Shown here piece by piece: positions 1-62,169 of a stretch of 64,000 bases of DNA (positions are counted from its first letter, which is position 1; the number at the start of each line of letters is the position of its first letter). The notes below the pieces were generated by a model. That model had not been told where the DNA came from and did not search any database. It worked only from the letters and a program-made list of their open reading frames with translations. Source of the DNA: Macrostomum lignano (taxonomy: Eukaryota). The stretch covers positions 124,001 to 188,000 of the forward strand of contig NIVC01000247.1 in NCBI GenBank assembly GCA_002269645.1. The letters run 5' to 3'. Made by a program: the position numbers and the translations under genes.

Positions 1-246
1 AAGCAAACGATCCTATTCATGAACAGGCGCTGCTTCGGTTGAATGCTCTCTATAACTAAGTTGACTATTCAAAGCTCTCATTTAATTCAATGCGCACGAA
101 AACAGTGAATTCAATTGTCTGCCAGCCAAGTTTGCGCGGATACATAGATGCAATATCTCTCAAGCTTATAAATTAGGATTGCTTCGTGTGCCATGAAAGA
201 CACAAATTTCCACGTCTCGTTTGAGTCTCACTGCTAAAGCTAGACG

Positions 247-3148: not shown

Positions 3149-3273
3149 CACGGTTAGGCTGGGCACTGATATTGAGGAAAAAATTGCCACAAGACGGCAC
3201 CTATGTGCCATTAAACTACTGCCTTTCTGTAGTTTGGAAAGCCCACTCATTAAAATTCATGTGCCTATCTTTG
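3149..3273 (+). repeat. Left TIR of Chapaev-type transposon
   Basis: Reverse complement of 6230-6354 with 5 mismatches. Confidence 0.95.
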
Positions 3274-3656
3274 CTGTGTATGGCACTATATGTTTCGGTA
3301 CACTTTAAAACAAAATATTTTATTGCTCTAATAGAATTTTTGCTAATCAGATGATAATTATGAATAGACCACAAAGGACTTTGGGAGTAAATATTGCCCC
3401 ATATCTGCTTGAGCAATAAAACGCTGCACCACAGGTAGCTTATGCCTTATAATTGCAGTCATAAAGAGGAATTTATCAATAGTAATAACACAGTAGTATC
3501 TTATCTATAATTGCTTTGTAATATTTCTGCCAGGTGCGTTAACTTGGTTATCATACTGCTCAATTTACTTATAAAGGTTTGATCTAGTTCTATTTGATCT
3601 AAAACAAGCGAGTGCCTGAACTGAAAGAGCTGTTTGCATAGCTTGTACTGTCTACA

Positions 3657-8600: not shown

Positions 8601-11600
8601 TGTTGTGTTCTAGTTGATTGATTAAATTCAATTCAGTTGGAGACACTTGAGTCTCGCTCAATATATTTATACTCATGTGCACGTTGAAAACAGTGTTACG
8701 CAATTGAAACAACGATACCATGATTGAACGCACGATGCATATAAGGTAATTGAACAATTCTACCCTCAAAGTTAGTTAGTTACAACACCTAGGCCTGATG
8801 CACAGTCACTACATTCTCCCCCCTTCCGGAAGAGGATAACGCGCCGGTTGCCGTCGAGCTCGAGTTGACCTTCGAAGTTCAGGTGGAGGTGGCGGCTCGC
8901 CCATCCGTGGGGGCGGAGCCGGCGGCAGCGGCAAATCGAACCAGTCGTCCTCTTGGTCGGCCGCGCCGTTGTCAGCCGGTGGGCTGTTGCACTTAACCAG
9001 CCGACTCGCTTACCATTTTGTACCGTCGGACAGCACGAAGGTGTTGCGCCCTGCTTTGGAGGCGATCTTTAGTGGTTCCTTCAGTCGGGTCGCCAGCTTG
9101 TGCGCTCGGTGCGGCGTCTGTCGCCAGACCCAGTCTCCGGCCTGGAGCATAGAGTCACGAGCTCGCCTTCGCTTGTTGGTGTAGTCGGCATTCTTGGCTT
9201 GCCTCTGTGTGATACTGTCTCGCAGGTCGCTGTCGTCCCGCTGTTGCACTGGAGTTGGCCTGAGCAGCTGCAGTCCGGACCGCAGCTTGCGCCCAATCAT
9301 CAGCTTGGCTGGAGTCAGCCCGGTGAGAGCGTGCTGGCTGGTCCTGTAAGTCTTGAGCACCAGGTCGATGGCGTCCTCGAACTTCGCTCCCGCCCTCAGG
9401 TTCGCTGCCAGGCCCTCCTTCAGACTCCGGTTGAATCGCTCGACTCCGCCGTTGCCTTGCGGGTAGTACCGGCTCACTCGGCTGTGCTTGATGCCCTCGG
9501 CTCGCAGGAACTCTTTGAACTCGTCGCTGACAAACTGGGGTTCGTTGTCGCTGATCAGCATCTTCGGGACTCCCCACCGGCCGAATAGCTTCCAAAGCGT
9601 CTTGATGATGTTGGCAGAGGTGACGGTTTCCATGGCTGCAATCTCCGGCCACTTGCTGTACAGGTCGTGGATCACCAGTAGAAACCGCTGGTGTCGAGGA
9701 GCCGCGGCGACCTCGCCAAAGATGTCGATCTCGACCTTGTCCCACGGTCCATCTGGCCACTCGATTGGTGTCACGATCGTCTGTTGAGGCTTACCGGACT
9801 TCTCCGCCAGAGTGCAGGCCGTGCAGTTCTTGACGTAGTCCTCCACCTGCCGGTCAATTCCAGGAAACCAGACCGTGTCGCGGCACCGCTGCTTTGACCG
9901 AACGACGCCCGGATGCCCTTTGTGGGCCTCTTCGATGACTTGAAGTCGCAGGCTCGTTGGGATGATCGCGCGTTCACCACGACCGAGGCACTGACCGTTG
10001 TTCCAGCAGAACAGCTCGTCCCCGGACGTTGAAGTACGGCTTTAGAGAGCTGTCCACCTTCGTTGGCCAGCCGCCCGAGATGTACTGCAAAACCGCCTGC
10101 AGCGCCTCGTCCTCCTTGGTCGCTGTTGCCAGTGCGCCTGCCGTCAGCGTTGTCTTCGAGTCGACGACTGCGTAGACGTAGCCCTCCTCGTCGGTCTCCT
10201 TGGCTGGAACGCGCTCCGTTGTGGCCCATCTGGACAGCATGTCCGCGCACTTGTTGTCAGCGCCAGGGATGTGCTCAAACCGGACGTCGTAGCTGCGAAG
10301 TCTCTCGACCCATCGATGAATGCGAAGAGGCCTGTGCCCCATGCCTTTCGAGTCGAGCAGAGTTGTCAGGGCCTTGTGGTCGGTGCGCAGCGTTACTCGT
10401 CTGCCGTATAGATAGTAGTGCCAGCGTTCGATGCTCCATACACAGGCCAGGGCTTCTCGCTCTCTGGCTGAGTATCGCTTTTCCGCTGGGCTGAGTGCTC
10501 TCGATGCGAACGCGATTGGCACCTCTTTTTCGTTTTGTACTTGGCTGAGCACTGCCCCCAGTCCATCTAGACTTGCATCGCAGGTGACGTACGTCTCAGC
10601 TTGGCAGTCAAAATGAGCTAACACTGGGCTGCTGGTTACGGCTGACTTGAGTGTACGGAAGGCTGTACGTTCCCGCTCACCCCAGTGCCAATCCGCGTCC
10701 TTTTTGAGCAGTTGTCTCAGAGGCTCGGCAATTGCTGAGTAATGCGGTATGAACTTGTGCAAAAAGTTCACTGCCCCGAGAAACGATTGAATTTGCGCGA
10801 CCGTTGATGGCTCAGGAATTCTTAGAATTGCGTCAACGTTGCACTTGGTCGGTTTGATGCCGTCTGCAGAGATGACCAATCCGAAGAAATCCACGCTCGC
10901 CTGCCGGAATTTGCACTTCTCTCGATTGAGTGTGAAGCCTTCGCAATGAATCCGCCCTAGGACTTCTCGGAGGTTCTTGTCGTGCTCAGTCTCGTCCTTG
11001 CCATGCACCAGGATGTCGTCCACGATGTTGATGGTGCCAGGAGCTCCTCGAAGCACCGTCTGCAGGGCTCGCTGGAAGGCAGCTCCGGAGCTAGATAGCC
11101 CGAATGGCACCACGGTGAACTGGTACAGGCCGGCATCGGTGATGAAGCACGTCAGTCCTCGAGAGTCTGGATGTAGCGGAATCTGCTGGTAGCCTTGACG
11201 CAGGTCCAGCTTGCTGAAGCACTTCGAGCCGTTGATGCTGGCCGATAGGTCCTCGATTGACGGTACCGGATAGTGGTCCGCGATCACCGCCTTGTTGACC
11301 TGCCGCAGATCCACGCAAAGACGAACCTTGTTGGACTCCTTCTTGCGCGTCACGACAACGTTGCTAACCCACTCGGACGCGTCGACCTTCTCAATGATGC
11401 CCTGTTGCTCCATCCGGCTGATCTCTGACGTCACTTCGTCCTTCAGGCCGATCGGCAGCTTCCGCATTGGCTGAGACACTGGCTTGACCGAGGCGTCGAT
11501 CTTTGTCTGGTGAATGAAGCTCTTGGACCGGCCCAGACCGTCGAAGATTCCGGGGAAGTCGCGCTCGATCGTAGTCTCGCTGATGCTCATCACTCTGTTG

Positions 11601-12924
11601 TCACCTTGGAAGATTTTGAATCCAAGGGCCTGAAACAAGTCGCGGCCCAAGATGTTCGCTCCTTTGTCGGCGACGTAGAATGTGGCTTCTGTCCTGATGC
11701 CGTTGAACATCACTGGAAGCTCGACCTTGCCGATGGTCTTGATCGCAGATCCGCCGTATGCCTCCAGTTTTGTGCTCGTCGGAAGCAGCGGGTGCCTAGC
11801 GAAGGACTTCTTGAACGTCTCCATGTTGAGCAACGAAACGGCAGCACCGCAGTCGATTTGCAGTCGAATCAGCTGTCCGCCCAGACGGCATTCGCAGAAT
11901 AAGCTGTCTGTGCTCTTGTTGTTCACGGCCAGGACCGTCAGACTGGACTCTGCAGGCTCTTTGGTGTCGATCGCAGAGACCGCTTTCATGCGGCACATTT
12001 TCGCGAAATGGTTCGTTTTGCCGCATCGTCTGCATTTCTGGCCCATCGCCTTGCATTCGCCCTTGTGTCCGTGGTTGCCTCCGCATCGAGTGCACTTTGG
12101 ACCTGCTGCTGCGGTCTTCTCATGGCGAGCAGCTGGCTTCGGCTTCTTGCTCAGCGCCTTCACATGGAGCTCTGGGCCGCTGACCTGCTTGGCATCTCTG
12201 ATGGCTGCTTCGATTCGCTCAGCCTTCTTGATGGCGTCATCTAGCGTCAGATCATCCTCCTCCATCAGGAGTCTTTCCCTAATGCGAGGTACGCAGGTTT
12301 TCTCCACAAGTTGGTCTCGAATTATTTCGTCGTGAAAGGTGCCAAATTTGCAGTTTGTTGCCAGTTCTCTCAGGGCCATCACGTAGTCTCCGATGCTCTC
12401 GCCGTCATGCTGGGCTCGCTGCCGAAAGGCAAAGCGCTCTGCTATGACGCTTCTCGACGAGCTGAAAATCGCCTTCAGTGCCGTTTTGGTCTCCTGAAGC
12501 GACTTGCTTGCATCGACGTTTGCAGCTCGGCAGCGTCCTTCCTCACCAAGCAGATGCAGGAGGATCGCCTTTTTCCGACTCTCTGATGCCTCTTCGAGAG
12601 CTCCAGCTACTAGGAAGTTCTCAAATGACTTGATCCACCTTGCCCATGGCACAGGAGGTTCGCCTGGTACTGGTTGAAACTCCGCTGGGTACGGGAGTCC
12701 GCTCGTCGCCATTTGTTGTGTTCTAGTTGATTGATTAAATTCAATTCAGTTGGAGACACGAGTCTCGCTCAATATATTTATACTCATGTGCACGTTGAAA
12801 ACAGTGTTACGCAATTGAAACAACGATACCATGATTAAACGCACGATGCATATAAGGTAATTGAACAATTCTACCCTCAAAGTTAGTTAGTTACAACACC
12901 TAGGCCTGATGCACAGTCACTACA
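8601..12924 (-). mobile_element. Ty3/Gypsy LTR retrotransposon, near full length (4324 bp)
   Basis: LTRs 12714-12924 (211 bp) and 8601-8813 (213 bp) with TG...CA ends, differing by one 2-nt indel and one substitution. 5-bp TSD GATAA (8596-8600, 12925-12929). PBS TGGCGACGAG 12711-12702; PPT 8827-8814. Confidence 0.95.
9010..12712 (-). CDS. Gag-PR-RT-RNaseH-IN polyprotein with a 1-nt frameshift at ~10020-10023
   Basis: Gag CCHC knuckles; protease LQIDCGA; RT LDLRQGY and IVDDILV; RNase H CDAS...EREAL...TDH; integrase GHPG..CTAC, DIFG, SDN, VERFN in ORF 9010-9846. An extra base in the C4 run breaks the RH-IN linker; TAA 9010-9012 cuts the IN tail. Confidence 0.9.
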
Positions 12925-22882: not shown

Positions 22883-25443
22883 TGTTGTGTATTGAACGCG
22901 TGGGTTTTTGTGCGAGCGAGAGTTGAGAAATAAGAATTGTGGAGTCTCGACTGACTCCGCCGCTTTATATTTGTTAGTAAATGAAGCGTGCACGTTGGGT
23001 GTATACACCTGGCAGATTGGCTATATGTTACGCAATGATTTGAGTTGAATACAATACTGTTGAAGTTCAGTACATCATACACCGTTCAGCTCGGGTAGCG
23101 CATTGGCGGGCGACGCTCGCGCTCTGACCTTCTCAGCACCGGCGGGGGTGCCGGCGGGTCCCCAGCGAGATCATCAGGCGGTCCTGGCGGATCCACCTCC
23201 GGGCCGCCACCACGTTCGTCGAGCTGCGCGTCGCCGTCGTCGTCGCTGCCTTTGCCCGGTCCGGCCAGCACGCAGCGCCGCAGGTGCCACCGCTTGCCGT
23301 TTTCGAGCAGCACAGTTGTCTTGAATCGCTTGCGAACCCGGAACGGCCCGGCGAGCTTCGGCTCCAGCTTGCCCGGTGCCGCAGGCTTGGAGATGTGCAC
23401 CCAGGAGCCGTCTTGGATGACCACGGTCCGCGTCGCCGATGCGTGCCGCCGACGGTCGGTGTCGCTCTTTGCTCGCTGCTTCGCCGTGGCGACCCGGTCA
23501 TGAGCCGACGTCGGCCGCATGGCTTCCGAGTCCGGCTGGAGTGCGAGCAGTGGGGTGCGCATTGGTCGGCCAGTCATGAGCTCGTGTGGACTCGAACCCG
23601 TGACGTGCGTTGGGGTCGCCCTATAGGCCGCGACGACAGCTCGGACGGCCTTGCAGAAGCTCCACCCGGCGACCAAGTGCGCTGTCACGCCCTCGCCGAG
23701 AGTGCGGTTGAATCGCTCGACGTTGCCGTTTTGTTCTGGACAGTACACTGCCGTTCGCTTGTGTTCGATCGCCAGGCTCGCCAGGTACTCGTCGAACTCG
23801 CGGCCGAACTGGGGTCCATTGTCGGTTGTGATGCTTTTCGGGATGCCCCACCTCGACCAGATGACCTCGAGGAAGTCGACGGCTACCTTGGTTGTGACCG
23901 ATTCTACAAGCGCGACTTCTGGCCAACGGCTGAACCGGTCGATGAGCACGATCGCGAATCGCTGGTGACGCGGCGCCGCTCTGAACTCTCCGCAGATGTC
24001 GAGCTGCAGCTCCTGCCAGGCTCCTGTTGGCGTGCTCGGCTGTTGCCTGATCGGCTCATAGAAGTCCTTGGAGTTGTCCTGAAGTTGTGAGCCCTCGTCA
24101 CTGAGATGGTTAATTTGAAGAGACACACCAAACTTCGAGAAGTCGGAGCGCCCAAGAAGGCTTGAGCTGCACTCTGTGATCTGGAAACAGACTGAGGCCG
24201 TCTTGTCCTTGTACATGACCGGGAGCGTCGCTGTCCCATAGGTCCGAATGTGCGAGCCTCCGTAGGCCACGAGCCGTGCTGGTGGTCCGCTTCCCTTGGT
24301 TGCGTGTCGTCGAACTCTCTGGAAGTCGGACGCGCTGATCACCGACACGGAGGCACCGCTGTCCAGCGTCAGCGTCAGCAGCTCGTCGCGGACCGCGCAT
24401 TCGATAGTGTGGGCGGCAGTCGAATCCTGGTTCGCGACTTGCAGAATGGTGCTCACCTCTTCACCGACGGTCGCCACCGTGTTGCTTCGGCAAAGTGGTT
24501 CGGCTTATTGCAGTTGTTGCACTTTTTCCCATTGCTGGGCACTTGTGCTCCTTGCTGTAGTCGCCGCCGCATCGCCTGCACTTCTCGCTGTCCTTGCGCG
24601 TTTTGGGCTTGGCTCTGACTTTCTGCTTTGAGACGGCGTGCACTGTCTTTTGGGATGCCCCTGATGTGCCGTTGAGGACCTGGGCTTCGTTGATGGCTGT
24701 CTCGATTTGGTTGGCGAGAGCTGCAGGGACTTCTCCAGTGTCAGGTCGTCTGGTTCCATCAGCAGCCTGGCACGCACGTTTTCTCGATGAGTTGATCGCG
24801 GACCATCTCATTTGTCAGGTCCTTGAACGCGCAATCGGCCGCGAGCTGCTGGAGATCTCTGACGAACTGCTGCACCGGCTCCCCTGGTCGCTGCTCCCTG
24901 CACCGAAACCTGTAGCGAGCTCCGATGACGCTCTTGTTCGGCACGAAGATTTTGTCCAGTTCTTCGAGCAGTTTCTTCATGTCGTTCGCCTCAACGCTTT
25001 CCGCCTGCCGTTGGCCCTCCGGCCCGAGGCAGTGTCGAAGGACGGCCATTTGTCTCGCCTCCGACATTTTGTCCAGTTCCGTTGCTGTTGATTAGATCGC
25101 GAACTGACTTTTCCACCTTGGCCACGGGCAGCTTGGCTCGCCCGGGCTAGCCAGGTACGGCGTTGGTGGGTTGAGACTGAAGTCTGCCATCTTCGTCGCC
25201 AATGTTGTGTATTGAACGCGTGGGTTTTTGTGCGAGCGAGAGTTGAGAAATAAGAATTGTGGAGTCTCGACTGACTCCGCCGCTTTATATTTGTTAGTAA
25301 ATGAAGCGTGCACGTTGGGTGTATACACCTGGCAGATTGGCTATATGTTACGCAATGATTTGAGTTGAATACAATACTGTTGAAACATAAATACGGTACG
25401 ACTGAAGTACTCAATACTTGTACTTAGTACTCACGCCACAACA
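22883..25443 (-). mobile_element. Internally deleted Ty3/Gypsy LTR element lacking RT and RNase H (2561 bp)
   Basis: 5' LTR 25203-25443; 3' LTR shares 182 bp (22883-23064). TSD GCAGG (22878-22882, 25444-25448); PBS TGGCGACGAAGATGG 25201-25187; gag with in-frame stop at 25092-25094 and frameshifts. Confidence 0.92.
23086..24477 (-). CDS. In-frame protease-integrase fusion ORF of the deleted Gypsy element
   Basis: LTLDSGASVS protease, then directly W..LQLDICG, IDRFSRWPE, TTDNGPQF, NGNVERFNRTL integrase core and LRRSERERRPP tail; no RT YxDD, no RNase H, no HHCC. Confidence 0.85.
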   Translation of the reverse strand: MATVGEEVSTILQVANQDSTAAHTIECAVRDELLTLTLDSGASVSVISASDFQRVRRHATKGSGPPARLVAYGGSHIRTYGTATLPVMYKDKTASVCFQITECSSSLLGRSDFSKFGVSLQINHLSDEGSQLQDNSKDFYEPIRQQPSTPTGAWQELQLDICGEFRAAPRHQRFAIVLIDRFSRWPEVALVESVTTKVAVDFLEVIWSRWGIPKSITTDNGPQFGREFDEYLASLAIEHKRTAVYCPEQNGNVERFNRTLGEGVTAHLVAGWSFCKAVRAVVAAYRATPTHVTGSSPHELMTGRPMRTPLLALQPDSEAMRPTSAHDRVATAKQRAKSDTDRRRHASATRTVVIQDGSWVHISKPAAPGKLEPKLAGPFRVRKRFKTTVLLENGKRWHLRRCVLAGPGKGSDDDGDAQLDERGGGPEVDPPGPPDDLAGDPPAPPPVLRRSERERRPPMRYPS

Positions 25444-30117: not shown

Positions 30118-33100
30118 TCAGTAGTTGCCGTAAGCCGGCGCGGCGTCCTCGGGGTGAGAGGCCTCGTAATTCTGCTGGGTGGTGGTGACCGAGTAGCTGT
30201 GGCCGCACTCGCCTTTGTGGAAATGATTTTTCAGCACCTGGTACTTGCGGAACATCAGGAAGCCAATGTAGCCGTGTAGGCCAAGCGTGGGAACGGCGAA
30301 CACCTGGGATAATGAGGCATCAGAGATTCTCGCTGACTTGAAGCCTATGCTAGTGCGAAATATTGAGATTGCTCAAGGATTTCCCACGGTATTTTTAATC
30401 GGGATTTCCCATGGGGAGTTTCTCAGAGGGATTTCCCATGGGAATTTCTTAAAGTTATTTCCCATTAGAAATTTCTCATAGGGATTTCCCAGGGGAGTTT
30501 ATCATAGGGATTTCCCAGGGGAGTTTATCATAGGGATTTCCCAGGGGAGTTTATCATAGGGATTTCCCAAGGGAGTTTATTATAGGGAATTTCCCAAGGG
30601 AGTTTATTATAGGGAATTTCCCAAGGGAGTTTATCATAGGGATTTCCCAAGGGAGTTTATCATAGGGATTTCCAAGGGGAGTTTATCAAAAGGATTTCCC
30701 GTGGGAGTTTATCAAAAGGATTTCCCGTGGGAGTTTCTCATTGGGATTTCCCATGGGAGTTTATCATAGGGATTTCCCAAGGGAGTTTATCATAGGGATT
30801 TCCAAGGGGAGTTTATCAAAAGGATTTCCCGTGGGAGTTTATCAAAAGGATTTCCCGTGGGAGTTTCTCATTGGGATTTCCCATGGGAGTTTCTTAAAGG
30901 GATTTCCCACGTGAGTTTCTCAGTGATTTCCCATTGGATTTTCTCATGGGGATTTCCCATATGAGTTTCTTAGAGGGATTTCCCATGGAAATTGCTCATA
31001 GGGATTTCCACTGGGAGTTTCTCATTGGGATTTCCCACAGGAATTTCACAAAGGTGAAAGTTTCCAGATTACCATTTGGAGTTTTTCAAAGGGATTCCCA
31101 TAAGGGTTCCCCAGTGGATTTTCTTACAGCAATAAGGATTTATCAGTAAGGGGGAATTCTGCAGATTAGCCAGAAATGATTTCAAAAAAAAACTCACAGC
31201 GCTGGCGATGGCGGCGCTGCCAATGCCCTTTCCGTTCACGGCCGAGAGGATGAAAGCAATCAGGCTCAGAATGACCACCACGGCCAGGTAGATCAGGATC
31301 TGAATGGGGTGGATTAAGAGAGTACAGATTATTAGATTGGTTATTGGTATGTGCGCATGCAGGGTTTTTCAAGCGTCAGAATAATGCCATTTGGGATCAA
31401 ATTAAATTTGTGCGTGATTCTAATTATTTTTTTATCATTTATCTTACACTAAGGAGACGTTCGTATGGAACCAATTTTATCATTGGTTCAGGAACTTATG
31501 AATACATTTCACTCAAGAACAACATTGAGTTTTGTTATGAACATCAATTAATTAACCTATCCCACAAATAAACAATTTGTTATCTCTTGTAAAGTAAATT
31601 TTGGTCGTCTGCCGCTTTTTGAAGTGCTCCTGACTTGAGTCACTGTGGCCAATTTTAGTGTCATTTGATTGAAGGCACTTCTTTTCCATTCACGTGATTC
31701 ACTTTAACTTTGTATAAAGGCCAAGTGAAGGGACAATCTGCAGTTTTTTCTGCGTAAACTTGTCGGGGAAGTCAAGCTGTTACGTTGTGCTGGCTTTAAC
31801 ATTTCTGGGTGTAATGTCAAAGTTGGTACAATGCTACTCATTGGTGACGCACCTGCCAGTGCTTATGCTCAAGGTTTTCTTAGTCATACTGCAGCAGCCA
31901 AATGATGCTCAAATTTTGTCGTTGTACAACCACTCGAATTCAGGATCGCAATGATTTTTCCAACTACTGCATGTACATAATAGTCGCACTGATTAATTTT
32001 ACAGAGCATATCGTGAAGATAAATCAGTGAGTCATGTCGCCTCTGATTGAAATTTCTGTTTTTATCTACACTTCCTCAAGCTACACTATGTATTTTATGT
32101 ATTTACTTCTTCGAGGTTCAGTGATTGGTATTCGTATGAATGTGCACATCGATCTCTCGAAAATTTTGGTTCCAATTTTGTCATTGTTGTTTGGTGTACA
32201 TTCATTAAGCTACAATTGTCATTTATTGTTGCATTTGCATGGGTTTGTTAAGTTATACGGCTTATTTGATTCATTTATTTGCTTTTCAGTTTGAAAACCA
32301 TCTTGGTGTTCTTAAGAACACGAGGTGTCCGACAGAAAGAGGTATTTTAAAACATGTCAGTAATCAGTTGATGGTGATGCGTTCTTTTTAAGTTCTCTCT
32401 CAAGCCTTGTTAATTGTAAAGTTGTGCAGTTGTAAATAGTCACTTCCAACTCAGTTTCTGGTGAAGATTTGATATTTCGCCGTGATTTGTCTATGCATCC
32501 CTACCCGTCAGGAAATCTTTCTATTGGTTATTATGCTGTGTCGCGATCATGGATTTCTGGTGCTCCTAAAGGGAAGGTTGAGTCTGAGTTCGTTTTGTTT
32601 CCATTGGCATCTACGAGTAATCATATTTAGTGATTCATGTTTGTGAGCACTGCTCAGAAATTTAGTGTATTACATTTTTGTTCCTTCAGCCTATAATACA
32701 CACTTGTCAGATAATATGCTGAAAATATTGAATTCACATCCGCTCTTTTGGTTAGTCACTTGCCTTTTGATCATTGACAACAATTTACAGGATTTTAGTA
32801 TATGGACTCTTACTAAGTAGCTGTCAATGGTCGCTTCATTGGTGAGAAATTAGGTTTGTCTTCCAACGGAACTGTTTTTTCCTTTGCTTTCAAATACTTG
32901 TACTTAGGAAAAATTATTTTTGAGTCAATGGCTGCTAAAATTTAGGTAATTTGTGTTGAATTCCAAATTAATAACTTTATGGGTCATTTGCTTTATTGAA
33001 TGTTACATTTACAGAGTTGCAAAATTCTATAGATAATTTCCCCAATTTTCATAAATTGTTTGAACAGAGATTTTCTGATTATCTTCATAATCTACATGTA

Positions 33101-35122
33101 GGATGTTTTTGTCTGTTGTCTATCCTCTTGAATATATCAGTCAAATATCGAATATGAGCAACCATGAATCAACGCAATGGTTTGTCGCTTCGGCATTGGG
33201 CCTTACTGAATTGAGTAAAGCTATGTTTTGAGTGCTCTTATTTATCGTCAGAACTCGGTCATTTTGTGCAATCTGTATAAACTGAAAGAGATGACGGAGG
33301 ATGAACGAATGCCTTTTCCACCAAGCTGCCTCAGAATTGGAAGTCGAAGAACTTCTGGCTGTGCTAAAGGATCCACCGCATCATCGTAAGAAGCTATCTT
33401 GAGTTTAGCACTCGTATAAGTAACTGGACTGGTGCCGAGACTGGAGAAAGTGGCCAGAATTGCTGCTCTCCCCCGCGAGGACCCGATTTCTTTGTACTTC
33501 TCGAAGGACAACCTGATACAGGCCATCAAACGCTCTAAGCCCTCGAAGGCCATTTGGCCTTGACGGTATTTGCCCGCTCGTCCTCAAATATCAAACCGCT
33601 CGCTGCATCACAATGAAATTCCTGCGGTCTGGAAGAAATCGCTGATCTGCCCGATTATCAAGAATGGCAAACCTCCAGATGACGGCGCCTCTTACCTCCC
33701 CCGCGGCCCGATTTCGTTTCTCTCACCGCTGGCAAAAATCTTCGAAAAACTCCTGCTGGGCAGCCTCCAGGAAACCAAAGTTTTTAGGTTCCGGGGGAAG
33801 TATGGTTGCAAAGCTGCAAAGCTGCGATGATGCGGTGGATCAGAAGCATTGATTACTTTATCAGTTACCTCGGTGTCAAAATTTCGGTGACTGGTAAGGT
33901 CATATGGTCGACGGATCAACTGAGGCAATGGCTAGGCAGGGTTATGAGCGCACCCCTGAAGCCTGACCAAAAGATCAAGGGGATTAAGGAAGTCCTAATC
34001 GGTAGGCTCACTTATCAACTCAGGCTAAGTGAGGTACGTTTCTGCGAGCTGAGGAGAGTTACTAGAATGGTCCAAAAAGCATGTAAGCAGATCCTACACA
34101 TGCAATTAGGTGCGCCCAATGCGTGGGCCCATCTGCCCCTGTGGAGATGCGGCCTCGGGCTACCTGATTTTGAGCTCACGATTCCGCTGATGCGGCGTGC
34201 TGCCTGCGAAAGCATGGCGAGCTCTTCGGACCCAGTTGTAGCCAACATAAGTGAAAAGATTCCAACTTATGAAAGTAGTCTCACTCGTGGACTTTACGTT
34301 AAATCCGCAAAGAAGGTTATACAGGATAAATATGAGCAGGCCTATTTGAGCACCCAGAGCGAAGCTCATGAGCGTACGGTGGGAAAGCGCGGTTAGACCT
34401 TATTGGCTACATGGCGGAGACGGTGTAGTGAAGGCGGGTGAATACGTGTCTATCAACAAGTTGGTTACAAGAACTGTTGAGACGCGCCAATTCATCCACC
34501 CAAGAGTCAAAGACTTTGAGACTCTGAAATGCCGTCGCTGTGGAAACGCGGTAGAAACTGATCTGCATGTTTTGAATGAATGCCCGTTTACCAGACTAGC
34601 CCAATGCCGCCGGCACAATTTTATTGCGGATTATCTTGGCAAAGCCCTGGTGGACAATGGTTGGGAAGTTTGGAGAGAACGGCTCGTTCGTAAAGATCTA
34701 GAGAACTTTAAGCCCGACCTGATTTGCAGGAAGGGCAACGATGGAGCGATCATAGACGTCACTGTACCCTATGAATCGAATGAGAATGTGCTACAATCAA
34801 AGGAACGGTTTAAAGAGGCTAAATATGAAGGTCTGAGGGGTCAAGTCGCCGAGCTTTTGAACATCTCTGGCGGCGTTAAAGTCGTTGGAATCGCTGTCGG
34901 TGCCTTGGGCACGGTTCTAACCACGACTCTCAATAAAGTGAAAGGACTCGGACTTGATCCAGTCAAGGTCGGAAAAACATTACAAATCTCAGCACTCCGA
35001 GGTTCAGGCCGTGTTTGTAAGGCCTTTCGGATTTAAGGCCCATATGCCTAGTGCCACCCCTTTTTGACACTAGCGCTACGCTAGGCAAGGATTAGGGTCA
35101 TTATGAGCCTAGTGGAAAAAAA

Positions 35123-35154
<32 letters not shown>

Positions 35155-38100
35155 GAATGGAGCCTGCGGCTTAATTTGACTCAACACGGGAAACCCCTGC
35201 TGACAGATGACCTGAAACTCCCAGCCTGGCAGCACGGCTTTCGCCCGATGCGCTCGACCACCACTGCCCTGTGCCAGCTCGTTGAGCAGATCAGCACTGG
35301 TTTCTGCCATGCTAAACACCCGGCGAGAACAGGCACAGTTGCCCTCGACTTGAAAGCCGCTATCGATTGTGTGGATCACTACGAGCTCATTACCGACATC
35401 TTTAACTCCGACCTGCCGAACCTGCAACTCTCCAACTACCTTCTTGGTCGTCACGCCCGCACCGTGCTGCGCGACTGCAAGTCCGCCTGGCGCCAAGTCC
35501 GTATGGGAGTCCCCCTTATGGCAGCGCGATCAACCCGCTTCTCTTCGCTTTCTACCTGAAGGACACCCCTATGCCGGACGACCCTGACTCAAGCCTTATC
35601 GGATACGCCGACGACCTGACTGTGGCTGCGTCTTCCGCTTCCATCTCGCGCATCCAGGAGCAACTTAACGTCTACCTGGCGCGTCTGGTGCTGTTTCTTG
35701 ACGCCCGCAAGCTCAAGGTCTCCGCAGTAAAATGTACTACGACGCTCTTCACTCCGGACCAACGGGAATACGCCAGGGCCCTCGAGGTCAACTTTGACGG
35801 CTTCAGACTACCCCAGGCCCTCTATCCTAAAATCCTGGGAGTCATCTTTGACCCGAAAATGACGTTTTGCCGCCACGTCAACGCGACGACCCAGAAGGCC
35901 CGCAAGCGTAATAGCGTCCTCCGTTGCTTGGCGGGCAGCAGTTGGGGTTGCTGCAAGGAGCTGCTTCTCAACACCTTTAGGGCGATTTCACGCAGCATCC
36001 TCAACTACGCTGCTCCTGTTTGGGGACCTACTATCTCGTCCTCCTCCTGGACCGGGCTCCAGGCGGTCCAAAACGCGGCCATTCGGTGCGTCACGGGCTG
36101 CACCGTCAGCGGTGCCGTGGCTGACCTCCACTGCGAGACTCGGATGCTCCCGGTCCAGCAGCACAACAGGCTCCTCTCTCCAGTTCCCTCTGGCCTCCCG
36201 CTGCCCTGAGCACCCCTGTCATCATCTTTCCGCCTGCCCGGCTCCTCGCCGGCGCATGAAGCCGTCCATCTTTACAGCACCGTTCTTTGATGATTCCTGG
36301 CAGCCAGTCACCGCCCCGGCGGTCATCGACGACGCGGCAGCCTGGGACAGGGCGAGACGAGCACAAAATTCGCTCATCGTACTGGATTATATCGACAGCC
36401 TACCTCCTAACCGCGTCGTTGGTCTCCGCCCTGATATCTGCGAGTCTGAACGCTCTCTGCCGCGCCGTACATTCTGCCTGCTCGCCCAGCTGCGCTCAGG
36501 TTTCAGCCCCTTGCTTCGCATCTACCAGCACCGGCTGAACCCTGAGACGCCTCCCAGCTGCCCTGAGTGTGGCGCGGCCTTGCATGACAGCCTGCATCTC
36601 TTTAACTGACCGGCTCACCCCACCGAGCTGGAGCCTTCGAATCAGTGGCGCAACCCCATTGAAGTCGCTAAGTTCCTGTTGCTGTCCGTCCAGCTTGACC
36701 CCGGCGAGAGTAAAAAACAACACCATCACGGTCGCAAGCGTCATCACGATCGCAAGTGTCATCACGATCGCAAGCGTCATCACGATCGCAAGTGTCATCA
36801 TGATCGCAAGCGTCATCACGATCGCAAGCGTCATCACGTCGCAAGCGTCATCACGATCGCATGCGTCATCACGATCGCAAGCGTCATCACGATCGCAAAC
36901 CCCATCACGGCAAGAGTGCTTGATATTTCGTCACCTTATCTATGCTCTAGACGACAGGATTTAGGACAAAAAAAACGAATTTAGACAGACGCTCGTACAT
37001 GTAAAAGCAGCCATAAGTTTCCAGGAACAATCCAGGTACATTGTTTGTACTAGCTGTTTCGTAATCATGCAGTGCCATTTTCTGATTAGCGTAGCCGCAA
37101 TTAAGTAGCAAGAATAACAATTTAGTTTTGTACTGCTATTGGGCTTATTGGCTTATAATTAATTACCATTCTGATATATATATATTGTTTTTTTTATTTA
37201 TCGAGACATTGAGTCACCAGTGTTTTACTGCACTTACTGCACTGTAGTACAAAAATAGTACAGGTGCTACTGAAATATTCTAGGGGTTAGCCCCTAAAAC
37301 CCTTCTGGCTCCTATGGGTCCCCTGCCGGTTTTTTCCAGTGTGGAGGTAAGCTACAGACAGGTACAGTAAGCTACAGACAGGTACAGTAAGCTACAGACA
37401 GGTACAGTAAGCTACAGACAGGTACAGTAATCTACAGACAGGTACAGTAATCTACAGACAGATACAGTAAGCTACAAACAGGTACAGTAAGCTACAGACA
37501 GGTACAGTAAGCTACAGACAGGTACAGTAAGCTACAGACAGGTACAGTAAGCTACAGACAGGTACAGTAAGCTACAGACAGGTACAGTAATCTACAGACA
37601 GGTACAGTAATCTACAGACAGATACAGTAAGCTACAAACAGGTACAGTAAGCTACAGACAGGTACAGTAAGCTACAGACAGGTACAGTAAGCTACAGACA
37701 GGTACAGTAAGCTACAGACAGGTACAGTAAGCTACAGACAGGTACAGTAATCTACAGACAGGTACAGTAATCTACAGACAGGTACAGTAAGCTACAGACA
37801 GGTACAGTAAGCTACAGACAGGTACAGTAATCTACAGACAGATACAGTAAGCTACAGACAGGTACAGTAATCTACAGACAGATACAGTAAGCTACAAACA
37901 GGTACTGTAATCTACAGACAGGTACAGTAAGCTACAGACAGGTACAGTAAGCTACAGACAGGTACAGTAAGCTACAGACAGGTACAGTAAGCTACAGACA
38001 GGTACAGTAATCTACAGACAGGTACAGTAAGCTACAGACAGGCACAGTAAGCTACAGACAGGTACAGTAAGCTACAGACAGGCACAGTAAGCTACAGACA

Positions 38101-39263: not shown

Positions 39264-40524
39264 TCAAGCCAGCTTAACTCCGCCACTCTTGGCCTGGTCC
39301 AGGCGATTCTCCACGTCGTCCCAGTTGATCACCTTCCAGATGCTCTTGACGTAGTCTGGGCGAACGTTCTTGTACTGCAGGTAGTAGGCGTGCTCCCACA
39401 CGTCTATGCCCAGCAGCGGCTCCAGGCCTGTGGTGGCCTTCAGCGGATCCTGGAATGCAATTTCAATGAGTGCAGGCGGGTCAGGACTGACTTTGGTGCT
39501 GACAGATGGGTCAGGACTGGCTCTGGTGCTGACAGGTGGGTCAGGACTGGCTCTGGTGCTGACAGGTGGGTCAGGACTGGCTCTGGTGCTGACAGGTGGG
39601 TCAGGACTGGCTCTGGTGCTGACAGGTGGGTCAGGACTGGCTCTGGTGCTGACAGGTGGGTCAGGACTGGCTCTGGTGCTGACAGGTGGGTCAGGACTGG
39701 CTCTGGTGCTGACAGGTGGGTCAGGACTGGCTCTGGTGCTGACAGGTGGGTCAGGACTGACTCTGGTGCTGACAGGTGGGTCAGGACTGGCTCTTGTGCT
39801 GACAGGTGGGTCAGGACTGGCTCTTGTGCTGACAGGTGGGTCAGGACTGGTTCTGGTGCTGTCATGATTGCTCAGGTCATGAATCAAGACATGCTAAGAT
39901 GAACCCATCTCAAACTGATGGGTCAATAGCTACTCGGATGGGGCAATAGCTACTCAGAAAGGTCAAAGGTCAGCTATAAAAGTACACACTGACCTGGTTA
40001 GCGCAGGTGGCAATCTGCAGCCGGTCAGTCTTGAAGTTATAGCCCAGCCAGGCCCATCCGCTACCCTGAACACCCACGGCGGCGGCTGACATCTGCTCCT
40101 GGAACTTGCTGAACGAGCCGAAATCGCGATTGACCGCCTCCAACAGGAACCGGGATGGCTCGCCACCGCCCTGAGGGCTGAGGTTCTTCCAGAAGATGCT
40201 GTGGTTCACGTGACCGCCGCCATTGAACCGCAGAGCCGCCTGGACGGCAATGATGTCGGAAGTTTTGCCGGCGGCTAGAGCGGCAGCCAGGGTCTCCTGG
40301 GCGGAGTTGAAATTGTTCACATAGGTGGCGTGGTGCTTCTGATGGTGCAGACGCATGATATCGGCGCTGATGACCGGCTCCAGGGCGCTGTAGTCGTAGG
40401 GCAGGTCGGGCAGGACAGCCTTTACAATTGGCTGAGGAGCCTGAGCCGCACCGCTGAGCGGTTGGATGCAGAGCCGCTGGCACAGACGGACAGCAGATGG
40501 CAGCTTGGAGCCGATGCAGTGCAT
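39264..40524 (-). CDS. SOD2: Mitochondrial manganese superoxide dismutase; exons 40524(or 40542/40566)-39994 and 39449-39264
   Basis: [64 protein letters not shown]; all four Mn ligands present. The start ATG is ambiguous; an acceptor AG at 40533-40532 favours 40524. Confidence 0.97.
39478..39863. repeat. 30-bp minisatellite GGGTCAGGACTGGCTCTGGTGCTGACAGGT (~13 copies) in the SOD2 intron
   Basis: Tandem copies. Confidence 0.97.
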
Positions 40525-58000: not shown

Positions 58001-60286
58001 TATATCGGGACTTATGAAATTTGATTATGAAATACTGATGTAGCGACCATGCAATTTGGGATGTGAGATCATGAAATTTGAAGATATGGGATCATTGACT
58101 TGGGATCTGGGATTATGAGATATTGGGATGTGAGATACTTTGGGATCTGGAATTCTGGGATCATGCGATATTGGGATGTGAGATACTTTGGGATCTAGAA
58201 TTCTGGGATCATGAAATATTGGGATGTAGGATCATGCGATATTGGGATGTGGGATCATAAGATATTGGGATGTGAGATACTTTGGGATCTGGAATTCTGG
58301 GATCATGAGATATTGGGATGTGAGATACTTTGGGATCTAGAATTCTGAGATCATGAGATATTGGGATGTGGGATCATGCGATATTGGGATGTGGGATCAT
58401 GCGATATTGGGATGTGAGATACTTTGGGATCTAGAATTCTGAGATCATGAGATATTGGGATGTGAGATACTTTGGGATCTGGAATTCTGGGATCATGCGA
58501 TATTGGGATGTGAGATACTTTGGGATCTGGAATTCTGGGATCATGAGATATTGGGATGTGAGATACTTTGGGATCTAGAATTCTGGGATCATGAGATATT
58601 GGGATGTGGGATCAGGGATCATGCGATATTGGGATGTGAGATACTTTGGGATCTAGAATTCTGGGATCATGAGATATTGGGATGTGGGATCATGCGATAT
58701 TGGGATGTGGGATCATAATATATTGGGATGTGGGATCATGCGATATTGGGATGTGAGATACTTTGGGATCTAGAATTCTGGGATCATGAAATATTGGGAT
58801 GTGGGATCATGCGATATTGGGATGTGGGATCATAAGATATTGGGATGTGAGATACTTTGGGATCTGGAATTCTGGGATCATGAGATATTGGGATGTGGGA
58901 TCATGCGATATTGGGATGTGAGATACTTTGGGATCTGGAATTCTGGGATCATGAGATATTGGGATGTGAGATACTTTGGGATCTAGAATTCTGGGATCAT
59001 GAGATATTGGGATGTGGGATCATGCGATATTGGGATGTGAGATACTTTGGGATCTGGAATTCTGGGATCATGAGATATTGGGATGTGGGATCATGCGATA
59101 TTGGGATGTGAGATACTTTGGGATCTGGAATTCTGAGATCATGAGATATTGGGATGTGGCATCATGAGATATTGGGATTTGGGATAATGAAGTTTAAGGA
59201 TGTGGGATCATGGACTTTGGAACATGAGATGCTCGCAGTTTGGAATCTGGGATTCTGGGATCAGGGAATTTAAGGATTATAAACTTTAGGATGTGTGATC
59301 ATGAGAATTGAAATATAAATGCTACAATGGGATCTGAATGTGTAATGAACAGAACAAAATTCAATGCTAAATGCAAATTACCTGAATGACAGCAACTGCA
59401 GACAGTCGGTGCAAATGGCCAGAAATTTCTGATTATTCTTCTTCAACAGGCCCACAATGACGGGAATGCCACCGCACTCGCGCACCTGCTCCTTGGCGCC
59501 ATCCTGATACAGCAGCAGATTGTGCAGAGTGGTAATCGAATAGAACTGAATCACTTCGATATTGCTGGACAGCTGTCTGATCAGAGCTGCCACACCGCCT
59601 GTCTTGAAGATGACGGCAAGGCCGCCGGGAGTCTGCGACATCTGATGCAGCGTGCCGGCCAGCCAGCGGGCGGGCTCCGGAGCGGCCGTGTCCAGCGACC
59701 TGACCAGAGCCTCAACCATGCCCGGAGTGTTGATGATGATCTCCAGATTCGGCCGAGTCTTGGACAGCTGGTTGATCATCATGGAGGCCTGGCCGACCAC
59801 TACGGGATCTTCGTCCTCGAGCAGCGGCACCAGTTCGGGCAGGGCCGAGGCCGCGTCGGCCAAATCCGACGCCTCGTCGAAGTTGCCGCCGATGGAGGTG
59901 AGGTTGGAGGCGGGGCCGCCGATGCCCTGGTCCAGCGGGATCGGGGTGTTGGTGGTGCCGCCGCTGCTGGACAGCGGGGTGCCCGGGCTCAACATGCCGC
60001 TCAGGTCGGACGGCGGGAACGCGGCTTCAACAGCTCCGACGCTGCCGGGATGTCCGGGCCCACTCGGCCATGGAGCTTCGAGTTCGTCCGAGCCTCCGAT
60101 CGGCTGCGAGCAGACGGACGGGGCCGAGGTGCCGGACATGACAGAGTGAATGCCAGAGTCAGACAGCATGTACTGGCCCTGCTGCTGCCACATCCGGGTC
60201 TGCTCGTCGGCGCTCTGCAGCGGCAGGTCGGCCAGAGCATCGAAGCCTTCGATATCGTCCGGGATGTTTGCATAGTCCGCATCCAT
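55008..60286 (-). CDS. CTNNB1: Beta-catenin (armadillo), ~835 aa; exons 60286-59382, 57907-57490, 56738-56406, 55859-55008
   Basis: DSGIHS degron; ARM repeats with [89 protein letters not shown]; intron phases are consistent. Confidence 0.96.
55910..56250. repeat. ~41-bp tandem repeat (GGGATCTCATAAATCATAATCTGG...) in beta-catenin intron 3
   Basis: Tandem diverged copies. Confidence 0.85.
56813..57365. repeat. 31-bp minisatellite ATCTGACACTAATTTTGATTTCCATGGCGCC in beta-catenin intron 2
   Basis: Tandem copies. Confidence 0.93.
58090..59260. repeat. Compound minisatellite (23-bp GGGATCATGAGATATTGGGATGT + 25-bp GAGATACTTTGGGATCTGGAATTCT) in beta-catenin intron 1
   Basis: Alternating tandem subunits. 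Confidence 0.95.
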
Positions 60287-62169
60287 GCCGAAATCTAAAC
60301 CGATTGAAATTTTTAGAAAAGATTTGAGAAAATTCTTCAAAACACACGAGATCTCAGTTTAAATCTCGTCGAACGCTGCTAAGATGGCAGAGAGAAACGC
60401 CTGCCGACTGAGGGCATGCATGAATTCAATAATAGGTAAGCAAACTGTTGGAATGGATCTAATAGTGAGTGCATTATAATCCATTTTAACTAATACCACA
60501 ATTATTGTTGTGTTATTCTGCTGGAATGCATCTACCTATTATTTACATGGCTAGGACTTACATCATTTTTTGTTTTATTTTTCTGTTTAAAATTAAAAAA
60601 ACCCTGACTTTTGAATATTCAGTATTACAATTTTTATAAGTTTTTTTTCTATGAAATTCTAAAAAAGAATTTAGAAGTTGGTTCTTTATAAAAAAAGTTT
60701 TCTTTTCTATTCTAGTTGAATTTAAATTTGAAAAGTTAGCACACCATGCATGTGGTACTAGCATCATTGAATTAGGCTACAGTCTAGAGGTTGGACAAGA
60801 TCTTAATCTTGCAATCAATAAACACTTTTCTCAATTTAATCTTGATTTAAGAAAGTGCTAAGAACCTGAGATATAAAATAAGGTAAAATAAAGAGCCCTA
60901 GCCCCTAGGCTTAGATACCAATACTTTGAATATATCATAGATATCTAGACATCAATATAAATACATTGAATTCAAACTGATTCAAATTAGTGCTAAAAAT
61001 TTAACTTATTTAGTGTTACTCAAATTATGGGATCAATAGTGTCCAGCCCTTAGGCTAGTCCCTAGCCCTATTTAGGTCAGAATAGAATATAAAAACTAGA
61101 ATTTTATTTTGGTATAAACTTGCCATGATCTGTACTGATTTTTAGTCTTCTAATCTAAGGACAAAATATATTAATGTATTTTAGTCAATGGGTTTTTCCT
61201 CATAGACAAATTGTCTAACAAGATTTGCTAGTCAATATTTAAATACCAAGTTTTTCCTCTTGATATTGGCCAAGAGGTTGTTGTGCAATCTTAACCCATG
61301 AGGGCCACTTCCCTTTATACTTTTTGCAAGATGTTTGGTATGCAATGTTATGCTTGGTGCACTCAGTGTGCAGTGTATGATGTTTAATGCGCATCTATGG
61401 ACTTTGACCTTATTGGAATAAATTAACAAATTTCAGATAACCATCTATTGCATTTTCAATATTTACTAGAGTTACATTGTGGTAGAAGGCAACATTGCAC
61501 ATTGTGTCATATTGCAATTGATGGGTGGCAGTGATAACAATACCACAAGAGTAACATAATTATCATTAAGACTTTGAATATAAGGTTTAAGAACATTTTA
61601 GAACACTTCATTTTTAGGCTTTTTATACTTTGGCAATCTTCTAGTTTTGCACATTTAATTATTTTAAAGCATTTTTAATTATTTTCAGCAAAGCAATCAT
61701 GGCTGGGCGCCTTGCAGCACCAACAACTATTTTTCTGGTCCCAGACCTAGGACCTGCTGCTGATCTGTGCAACCTGAACCCCTTGATATGTGAGTTCAGT
61801 GCAATTATGGCTACCAATGATGCGATGATCCCCTGGCTAGCCACGTATCACCTGCTGGCCAATGCCCAATCATTTGATGGTGAACCACCAGCTGCACTTT
61901 GTGGACCATACATGCGCAACAGTTGGCCAAGTTGGCTGATCCAGCCAACTGATTTGGTGGCCAGCCAAGACAAGTTGCAAAAATGCCCACCTAAATAGAT
62001 ACCGAAGTAGTACTAAGTAGATGATGAGGCATTTTTCTTTAATAAGACAGTTATAGATAGTTACTCCTGCTGTTTACCTAGAGTTGCGTTAATTTTGCTT
62101 TAGGGTTTCTTTTACATGTAAGGCGCATTTTTGGCTAAAAACTATGTCGCATTTTTGTTAAAACTAAGT

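What the first reader, a model, noticed from the sequence alone, without database searches (positions are those of the whole stretch)
33759..35195. R2-clade retrotransposon caught at an 18S rDNA target site (R8-like specificity)
Seen: an RLE-type non-LTR element (thumb, CCHC, PD..D..K endonuclease, short 3' UTR, A7 tail) is flanked by contiguous halves of 18S rDNA. The 3' junction is AAAAAAA|TAAAGGAATTGACGG. The 5' junction is GCAAAGCTG + 8-bp duplication, with loss of AAACT, on a 5'-truncated element. A precise 3' end with a sloppy 5' end is the signature of R2-type target-primed reverse transcription. Established: R2 normally targets 28S; R8 of Hydra is the known R2-family lineage retargeted to 18S. 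Inference: this animal, apparently a bilaterian and possibly a flatworm, carries an 18S-specific R2-family element inserting at AAACT^TAAAGG. It is either a wider-than-known R8 or an independent 28S-to-18S switch, which makes it a candidate new site-specific integrase system. I cannot verify from memory whether the site is nucleotide-identical to Hydra R8.
Basis: partly seen in the sequence, partly recalled or inferred. Interest (0 to 1): 0.9.

Follow-up and report, generated by a model that had tools for sequence, protein, structure and literature searches.

The report
Relic 18S-targeting R8 retrotransposon copy
This is a broken, front-truncated copy of an R2-family retrotransposon that targets one exact spot in the 18S ribosomal RNA gene (the 'R8' lineage known from Hydra, here in a Macrostomum flatworm). 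It survives with short scraps of 18S on both sides inside another dead retrotransposon, so the locus is an ordinary fossil, but it shows that R8 is more widespread than published surveys say.

Summary
Window 33825-35122 is a 5'-truncated, frameshifted R2-superclade element (thumb, CCHC, RLE nuclease, 79-nt 3' UTR, A7).

Two corrections. First, the 18S flanks are only about 58 and 73 nt, and the whole block lies inside another decayed LINE, bounded by a 7-bp duplication (CCTGCTG). This is a relocated fossil, not an element caught in an rDNA array. Second, it is not a new system.

An intact 1156-aa relative (84-88% amino-acid identity) sits in a genuine Macrostomum lignano rDNA unit at the same 18S position (AAACT^TAAAGGAATTGACGG). 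Six further related lineages from metagenomes and one genome assembly use the same nucleotide position. Hydra R8Hm-A nests among four of them (99% bootstrap). The Macrostomum element branches beside that clade, but with only 47% support. Its zinc-finger/Myb region is most similar to the 18S-inserted lineages.

Best reading: a dead copy of a flatworm member of the R8 (18S-specific R2-A) lineage. Novelty: new member of a known kind. Hydra's own R8 junction could not be checked here.

The parts
33290..33751 (+). Outer, decayed non-LTR (LINE) element, left part: N-terminal part of its reverse transcriptase. The start coordinate is approximate.
   Evidence: ORF fragments ending ...PISFLSPLAKIFEKLLL. 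Joined to the right part, they give one continuous Pfam RVT_1 match.
33752..33758 (.). Left copy of the 7-bp direct repeat CCTGCTG (target-site duplication of the secondary insertion).
   Evidence: Read directly. The identical heptamer occurs at 35196-35202. Chance of a match at a fixed position is about 6e-5.
33759..33816 (+). 18S rRNA 5' flank (about Rfam SSU model 1086-1139), ending GCAAAGCTG.
   Evidence: 96.8% identity over 62 nt to M. lignano 18S in L001 4519-4580.
33817..33824 (+). 8-bp tandem duplicate of upstream 18S (CAAAGCTG) at the 5' junction.
   Evidence: The same kind of duplication occurs in L001 (22 nt) and L005/L006 (several nested copies).
33825..33843 (+). 19 nt of uncertain origin at the truncation point: either non-templated or a diverged piece of the element.
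   Evidence: The DNA alignment to the full-length copy starts only at 33844.
33844..35036 (+). ORF remnant of the R8-like element: end of RT/thumb, linker, CCHC knuckle (34530-34583), RLE nuclease (about 34608-34826) and C-terminus. One frameshift near 34357; stop codon at 35034-35036.
   Evidence: 86.7% nt identity to L001 7115-8466. 84-88% amino-acid identity to P0001 residues 751-1155. Matches solved R2 proteins in the PDB.
35037..35115 (+). 3' UTR of the element (79 nt).
   Evidence: Aligned to the 3' UTR of the full-length copy in L001. Both give the same predicted fold, but the z-scores are weak (-1.1 and -1.75).
35116..35122 (+). A7 tail.
   Evidence: Relatives carry A13 (L001), about A100 (L002), A21 (L010), (AAATT)n (L003) or no tail (L005, L008, L011).
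35123..35195 (+). 18S rRNA 3' flank starting TAAAGGAATTGACGG (Rfam SSU model from 1145/1146). Carries a 3-nt insertion and point changes relative to M. lignano 18S.
   Evidence: Rfam SSU_rRNA_eukarya E=2.6e-07; BLAST to L001.
35196..35202 (.). Right copy of the 7-bp direct repeat CCTGCTG.
35203..36975 (+). Outer LINE, right part: rest of the RT (...LTDDLKLPAWQHGFRP..., YADD), a C-terminal region, and an 18-mer tandem array (36724-36909) at its 3' end. The end coordinate is approximate.
   Evidence: RVT_1 hits, ORFs, tandem repeats.

Best explanation
Window 33759-35195 is a dead, relocated fossil of an insertion event by an R8-type retrotransposon. R8 is the 18S-specific offshoot of the R2-A clade.

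How the family works (inferred from the R2 model of target-primed reverse transcription). The single protein has three N-terminal zinc fingers plus Myb, then RT, a CCHC knuckle and an RLE nuclease. It binds its own 3' UTR RNA and recognises the universally conserved 18S sequence GCTGAAACT^TAAAGGAATTGACGG. It nicks the bottom strand at that point and primes reverse transcription from the nick, which gives a fixed 3' junction. The 5' end is joined imprecisely by microhomology. That produces small target deletions, tandem duplications of upstream 18S, and frequent 5' truncation.

Shown here: an intact copy lies in a Macrostomum lignano rDNA unit, and seven related lineages use the same nucleotide position.

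History of the window copy. It first inserted into an 18S gene, 5'-truncated at about codon 752-759 of 1156, with loss of AAACT and an 8-bp duplication. Later a 1.44-kb piece of that interrupted 18S was inserted into an unrelated LINE copy. The piece held about 58 nt of 18S, the element and about 73 nt of 18S, and the insertion made a 7-bp target-site duplication. That it happened is shown.

The route of relocation is inferred. Most likely a fragment of pre-rRNA was reverse-transcribed in trans, because a truncated element that lacks its 5' processing signal would stay embedded in the rRNA. Capture of a DNA fragment at a staggered break is the alternative. Since then the copy has decayed (one frameshift, about 13% nt divergence). 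It has no RT domain and cannot move.
For: R2 family: the C-terminal 222 aa match solved R2 proteins. P0001 matches them over RT and RLE at E=1e-90.

Full-length relative: P0001 is M. lignano BOX15_Mlig021084g3. It lies between the two halves of an 18S gene that is followed by 5.8S and 28S.

Same site in relatives, seen in L002, L003, L005/L006, L008, L010 and L011. Two further hits came from a DNA-pattern scan that used no protein query (L020, L028).

R8 link: the R8Hm-A sequence from the supplement of PMC5678591 has its best matches in exactly these lineages. It nests among them with 99% bootstrap. The zinc-finger/Myb region of P0001 is closest to the same lineages.

Relocation: identical CCTGCTG heptamers flank the block. 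Removing the block and one repeat restores a single continuous RVT_1 match in the outer LINE. There are no rRNA genes elsewhere in the window.

The 5'-junction duplications match what Eickbush et al. 2013 describe for R2 and hydra R8 (PMC3774820).
Against: The Macrostomum protein's position beside the R8 clade has only 47% NJ bootstrap support, and no maximum-likelihood tree was possible.

Hydra R8's own junction sequence could not be retrieved, so 'same site as R8Hm' rests on R8Hm-A nesting among lineages whose sites I did read.

No HDV-like 5' ribozyme was found by Rfam or by a strict descriptor.

The RNA versus DNA route of the secondary relocation is not resolved: there is no poly(A) at the end of the relocated block.

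The window itself was not found in the contig collection. The species assignment therefore rests on the 18S flanks and on element similarity.
Confidence: 0.85

Rival explanations
1. The Macrostomum element switched from 28S to 18S on its own, converging on the site used by R8. It would then be a new site-specific lineage rather than an R8 member.
For: P0001 joins the R8 clade with only 47% bootstrap. Two neighbouring lineages, P0095 and P0144, show no rDNA flanks.
Against: Convergence on the identical nucleotide of an 1.8-kb gene is improbable. The DNA-binding N-terminus of P0001 is most similar to the 18S-inserted lineages (P0159 E=1.5e-25). P0097/P0163, which branches next to P0001, uses the same site. 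NJ places P0001 as sister to the R8 clade.
Confidence: 0.08
2. The 18S-element-18S block entered the outer LINE during that LINE's own reverse transcription. The RT would have switched template to an rRNA/R8 co-transcript and then back, so the chimera was born as one cDNA rather than by a later insertion.
For: The block has no terminal poly(A). It lies inside an RT-coding sequence in the same orientation. One G (33758) is shared at the left junction.
Against: This route needs two switches that return to within 7 nt of the departure point. A clean 7-bp direct repeat with restoration of the RT match is the classic signature of insertion at a staggered break. No useful microhomology is present at the right junction.
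Confidence: 0.15
3. The locus is an assembly chimera joining rDNA reads to a dispersed LINE.
For: rDNA and its insertions are often misassembled. The window could not be found in the public contig collection for an independent look.
Against: The flanking 7-bp duplication is present. The 18S flanks carry private mutations, including a 3-nt insertion. The element is 13% diverged and frameshifted relative to the rDNA copy. A mis-join with live rDNA would show near-identical sequence and no duplication.
Confidence: 0.03

Closest known systems
R8 (R8Hm-A/B) of Hydra magnipapillata, the 18S-specific lineage inside the R2-A clade (Kojima et al. 2006; cited in PMC5035012)
   Same: RLE-type single-ORF element and 18S-specific. 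R8Hm-A (RT to CCHC) is 36% identical to the Macrostomum protein in the tree alignment. It is 40-46% identical by BLASTP to the metagenomic lineages that share the site, and it nests among them with 99% bootstrap. Tandem duplications of upstream rRNA at 5' junctions are reported for hydra in PMC3774820 and are seen here.
   Different: The host is a flatworm, not a cnidarian. The Macrostomum protein branches outside the well-supported core. Hydra's exact junction was not available to me. From my memory of the 2006 abstract, which I could not check, R8 lies 37 bp upstream of R7.
R2 sensu stricto (28S-specific; R2Bm, R2Tg and others)
   Same: Same domain order (ZnF/Myb, RT, CCHC, RLE). Best solved-structure matches are A-clade R2 proteins. 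Same junction asymmetry, expected from target-primed reverse transcription.
   Different: The target is 18S AAACT^TAAAGG, not 28S AAGG^TAGC (site as quoted in PMC7650587). Recent surveys define R2 by the 28S site and therefore exclude such elements (PMC13188248).
R9 of bdelloid rotifers (R2-derived, a different 28S site)
   Same: Another R2 derivative that changed target within rDNA (PMC5035012).
   Different: It falls in a different clade in my tree (R9Av groups with P0051/P0105). Its target is in 28S. [quoted passage not shown]
R7 of Anopheles (18S-specific, R1 clade, APE nuclease)
   Same: It inserts in 18S.
   Different: It has an unrelated nuclease type and belongs to a different clade. 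Its site is different according to my memory of Kojima 2006. Not tested here.
Dispersed rRNA-derived pseudogenes and 'orphon' fragments
   Same: A short piece of rDNA found outside the array, flanked by a target-site duplication and decaying neutrally.
   Different: This fragment happens to carry an R8-type insertion and landed inside another LINE.

Membership tests
R2 superclade (RLE-bearing, R2-like non-LTR elements) | C-terminal CCHC knuckle followed by a PD-(D/E)XK restriction-like endonuclease homologous to that of R2 | tested here: met
   Window ORF 34368-35036 matches R2Tg, R2Bm and other solved R2 proteins (E=5e-19 to 2e-09) over the CCHC and RLE regions. C55/C58/H67/C72 and K115-P116-D117...D130...K152 are present.
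R2 superclade (RLE-bearing, R2-like non-LTR elements) | Single ORF with N-terminal zinc finger(s) plus Myb, then RT | tested here: met
   Met for the full-length family member only. P0001 (1156 aa) has three ZnF-like motifs and a Myb-like segment, RVT_1 at residues 515-770, and matches R2 proteins at E=1e-90. The window copy lacks everything upstream of about residue 752.
R2 sensu stricto | Insertion at the conserved 28S site (AAGG^TAGC) | tested here: not met
   Both the window copy and the full-length copy are flanked by 18S. In L001 the 28S gene is uninterrupted (one Rfam hit covering model positions 1-3401).
R8 (18S-specific R2-A lineage) | Site-specific insertion in 18S rDNA | tested here: met
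   Two independent copies of the Macrostomum family (window, L001) and seven related lineages share the 3' junction before (T)AAAGGAATTGACGG.
R8 (18S-specific R2-A lineage) | The same nucleotide position as Hydra R8Hm | not testable with these tools
   Kojima et al. 2006 and Repbase are not held. No Hydra locus could be fetched. The only support is indirect: R8Hm-A nests among lineages whose site I read.
R8 (18S-specific R2-A lineage) | Phylogenetic grouping with R8Hm-A | tested here: inconclusive
   NJ on 671 columns (RT to CCHC) gives 99% bootstrap for R8Hm-A plus nine metagenomic lineages. P0001 is their sister with 47% support. N-terminal domain similarity points the same way.
R8 / R2 | 5' self-cleaving HDV-like ribozyme that processes the rRNA co-transcript | tested here: inconclusive
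   No Rfam match in L001 4480-4900 and no hit with a strict HDV-like descriptor. However, 7-11-bp complementarity links upstream 18S to the first 35 nt of the 5' UTR in five of six elements, and tandem 18S duplications occur at 5' junctions. The window copy has no 5' UTR.

The most novel reading that the evidence does not exclude
R8 is not a Hydra curiosity. It would be an old, widely distributed 18S-specific branch of R2-A that hits one invariant nucleotide position in the universal AAACTTAAAGGAATTGACGG segment of small-subunit rRNA. It is present in flatworms (an intact, probably active copy in Macrostomum lignano) and in at least six other lineages seen in metagenomes and a genome assembly. 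It may have been missed because recent R2 surveys require a 28S flank. If so, it would offer a second natural rDNA-targeting TPRT protein family with a different, equally conserved site.
Probability: 0.6. Interest if true: 0.55.

Novelty: new member of a known kind. Interest (0 to 1): 0.4.

Why it matters
The locus has no function; it is a fossil. Its value is as a pointer to three things.

1. It documents an R8-type element in a bilaterian. An intact copy sits in the rDNA of Macrostomum lignano, a laboratory model flatworm.

2. Together with the relatives found here, it shows that an R2-A sub-lineage has kept one fixed 18S site across diverged hosts. This bears on how R2-type proteins change and then hold target specificity.

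3. R2 proteins are being developed for site-specific transgene insertion at the 28S site (PMC13580325). A family with a different, universally conserved rDNA site is an obvious candidate for the same tests.

The nested structure also gives a clean example of an insertion-bearing rRNA fragment being moved to a new genomic place.

Tried and rejected
Searches that gave nothing useful:
- Word-index protein searches with the window ORF, with P0001 and with an 11-sequence alignment returned almost nothing beyond M. lignano itself. The exhaustive HMMER search was what worked.
- Naming hosts through cluster look-ups failed because nearly all relatives are unnamed metagenome or Logan proteins.
- Kojima 2006, Gladyshev 2009 and Thompson & Christensen 2011 are not held, so the published R8 junction could not be read. 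The supplements of PMC5035012 and PMC4838377 held no R8 sequence.
- Exact look-ups of window ORFs in the contig collection found nothing.
- The first metagenome pattern, A8 followed by TAAAGG..., found nothing. The second pattern gave 19 loci, of which only 2 were insertions.

Ideas tested and not supported:
- HDV-like ribozyme: no Rfam match and no descriptor hit. One dubious L008 hit with a 180-nt P4 was rejected.
- 3' UTR fold: the predicted shape is the same in the window and L001, but it is not better than shuffled sequence.

Rejected readings:
- In-situ decayed rDNA unit: the window has no other rDNA and the outer LINE halves rejoin.
- Misassembly: the copy has private mutations and a flanking duplication.
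- L007 (P0162) and L009 (P0144) were uninformative, and L004 (P0095) has no rDNA flanks.
Full report
OBSERVATION

From 33759 to 33816 there are 58 nt of 18S rRNA ending in GCAAAGCTG. They match the Macrostomum lignano 18S at 60 of 62 positions when the shared G at 33758 is included. Next come an 8-bp repeat of CAAAGCTG (33817-33824) and 19 nt of unclear origin.

From 33844 the sequence aligns at 86.7% nt identity to a full-length element. At protein level the window copy covers residues 751-1155 of a 1156-aa relative, in two frames joined by one frameshift near 34357, at 84% and 88% identity. The stop codon is at 35034-35036. A 79-nt 3' UTR and A7 (35116-35122) follow.

At 35123 the 18S resumes with TAAAGGAATTGACGG. 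Rfam aligns it from SSU model position 1146 with E=2.6e-07. Relative to intact 18S (GCTGAAACTTAAAGG) the 5' side has lost AAACT. The C-terminal 222 aa match solved R2 proteins over the CCHC knuckle and the restriction-like endonuclease (R2Tg 7e-19, R2Bm 1.6e-10).

The 18S flanks stop after about 58 and 73 nt. The 64-kb window has no rRNA gene at Rfam gathering score. A BLAST of the whole window against a complete M. lignano rDNA unit finds only these pieces.

On both sides lies one decayed LINE. The left part ends ...PISFLSPLAKIFEKLLL and the right part continues LTDDLKLPAWQHGFRP.... The heptamer CCTGCTG occurs at both boundaries (33752-33758 and 35196-35202). If the block and one heptamer are removed, the two halves give a single continuous RVT_1 match.

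So a 1.44-kb fragment, consisting of 18S, truncated element and 18S, was inserted into an existing LINE copy with a 7-bp target-site duplication. The element was therefore not caught in an rDNA array. It is a relocated fossil that preserves an older 18S insertion event. The private changes in the flanks (a G-to-A change and a 3-nt insertion) and the 13% divergence of the element argue against a misassembly with live rDNA.

WHAT THE ELEMENT IS

An exhaustive HMMER search with the 222-aa ORF found 1184 relatives. The best was P0001, 1156 aa and 89% identical. P0001 is 'hypothetical protein BOX15_Mlig021084g3 [Macrostomum lignano]', encoded on NIVC01003830.1.

There the intact ORF lies between the two halves of an 18S gene, followed by 5.8S and an uninterrupted 28S. 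P0001 has three zinc-finger-like motifs and a Myb-like segment at the N-terminus, then RT, CCHC and RLE. It matches solved R2 proteins at E=1e-90, best to A-clade R2s. The host guess ('possibly a flatworm') was right. The family is 18S-specific in a real rDNA unit.

THE SITE IS SHARED BY A WHOLE CLADE

I fetched the contigs that encode the nearest full-length relatives. Seven lineages sit in 18S with the downstream flank starting at the same position:
- P0001 (L001)
- P0004 (L002)
- P0009 (L003)
- P0160 (L005, L006)
- P0163/P0097 (L008)
- P0156/P0008 (L010)
- P0015 (L011)

These were read. The 3' junctions read tail|TAAAGGAATTGACGG. The tails vary: A7, about A100, A21, (AAATT)n, or none. The L001 copy reads A13|GGAATTG, so the T is lost or masked there.

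The 5' junctions are variable: GCTGAAACTT|, GCTGAAAC|, GCTGAAA|, GCTGA|. L001 has GCTGGAACT, then 9 extra nt, then a 22-nt duplicate of upstream 18S. L005/L006 have several nested partial duplicates. This fixed 3' end and ragged 5' end is what R2-type target-primed reverse transcription predicts. The duplications are the kind Eickbush et al. describe for R2 and hydra R8 (PMC3774820).

A protein-independent scan of metagenome contigs for a non-T base before TAAAGGAATTGACGG... gave 19 loci. Two of them (L020, L028) carry R8-like ORFs directly upstream. The rest are natural 18S variants. Two neighbouring lineages (P0095 in L004, P0144 in L009) show no rDNA flanks.

IS IT R8?

The literature held here says that only R8 (Hydra, 18S) and R9 (rotifer, 28S) changed target within the R2 superclade, and that R8Hm-A/B lie inside R2-A (PMC5035012). 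A 2026 survey defines R2 by the 28S site and so would not list such elements (PMC13188248).

I recovered the R8Hm-A protein (RT to CCHC, 570 aa) from a supplementary alignment of PMC5678591. Its best matches in my set are exactly the 18S-inserted lineages, at 40-46% identity. In an NJ tree with named references (R2Bm, R2Dm, R2Lp, R2Dr, R2Amel, R2Nvit-B, R2Ci-B, R9Av), R8Hm-A nests among them with 99% bootstrap. The Macrostomum protein is the sister branch, but with only 47% support.

The zinc-finger/Myb region of P0001 is the part that reads the target in R2. It is most similar to the same 18S lineages (P0159 E=1.5e-25). With the identical insertion position, this makes common descent much more likely than an independent switch.

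What I could not do is read Hydra's own junction, because the 2006 paper and Repbase are not held. From memory only, that abstract places R8 37 bp upstream of R7.

MECHANISM

Shown: the domain set, the fixed 3' junction, the ragged 5' junctions, the truncation, the nesting and the 7-bp duplication.

Inferred from the R2 model: the protein binds its 3' UTR and nicks the bottom strand opposite AAACT^T. It then reverse-transcribes from the nick and joins the 5' end by microhomology or by 18S sequence carried on the RNA.

I looked for the 5' ribozyme expected of R2/R8. Rfam found none and a strict HDV-like descriptor found none. In five of six elements, however, 7-11 bp of upstream 18S can pair with the first 35 nt of the 5' UTR. 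This point stays open.

For the relocation I favour reverse transcription in trans of a pre-rRNA fragment, because a truncated copy without 5' processing signals would stay embedded in rRNA. Capture of a DNA fragment at a staggered break fits equally well. A double template switch during synthesis of the outer LINE is less likely.

VERDICT

The locus is an ordinary dead fossil. The family behind it is a flatworm member of the known R8 kind, with an intact copy in M. lignano rDNA. It belongs to a broader 18S-specific clade than the open literature describes. Novelty: new member of a known kind. Interest is moderate.

Noticed in passing
L001 15908-16069: A U1 snRNA gene (Rfam 145 bits) lies about 1.9 kb downstream of the 28S gene, in the same orientation, in the M. 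lignano rDNA contig. It therefore appears to sit in the rDNA spacer.
   Followed up: no
L001 about 4779-4790 (5' UTR of the full-length element): A perfect 12-nt antisense match (GCAACCATACTT) to the 18S just upstream of the insertion site (AAGTATGGTTGC). It lies 164 nt into the 5' UTR. Chance is about 5e-4 and its function is unknown.
   Followed up: partly
L008 85-270; L011 43-60: The 18S-derived ATG in GTATGGTTGCAAAGCTG is in frame with the element ORF in L008 (61 open codons) and in a 5'-truncated copy in L011 (the protein starts MVAKF). This hints that the upstream rRNA could supply a start codon, but chance is not excluded.
   Followed up: partly
L005 1660-1760; L006 750-850: The 5' junction carries about five nested partial tandem copies of TTGCAAAGCTGAAACTT before the element begins. 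L005 and L006 encode the identical protein, yet their 18S 5' parts differ by 3.7%.
   Followed up: no
window 36724-36909: An 18-mer tandem array (CATCACGATCGCAAGCGT, 10.4 copies) forms the 3' end of the outer LINE.
   Followed up: no
window 30377-31037; 37347-38100; 39473-39861: Three satellite-like arrays flank the locus: a 26-mer x25, a 20-mer x38 at 95% identity, and a 30-mer x13 at 97% identity.
   Followed up: no
window 9974-12712 (-); 23086-24477 (-); 59378-60340 (-): A Ty3/gypsy-type pol ORF (RVT_1, RT_RNaseH), a separate integrase-core ORF, and an ORF with an Armadillo repeat. The window is a transposon-rich region.
   Followed up: no
L017 about 870-941; L021; L024: Three metagenome contigs share an identical sequence that does not look like 18S immediately upstream of TAAAGGAATTGACGG. 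It has no R8-like ORF. It may be an intron or a divergent protist 18S at the same position.
   Followed up: no
L010 3804-3952: The 18S 3' flank of the P0008/P0156 element is 96.6% identical to M. lignano 18S over 149 nt. The flanks of L002 and L003 are only about 82-83% identical to it. The host of L010 may therefore be another flatworm.
   Followed up: no
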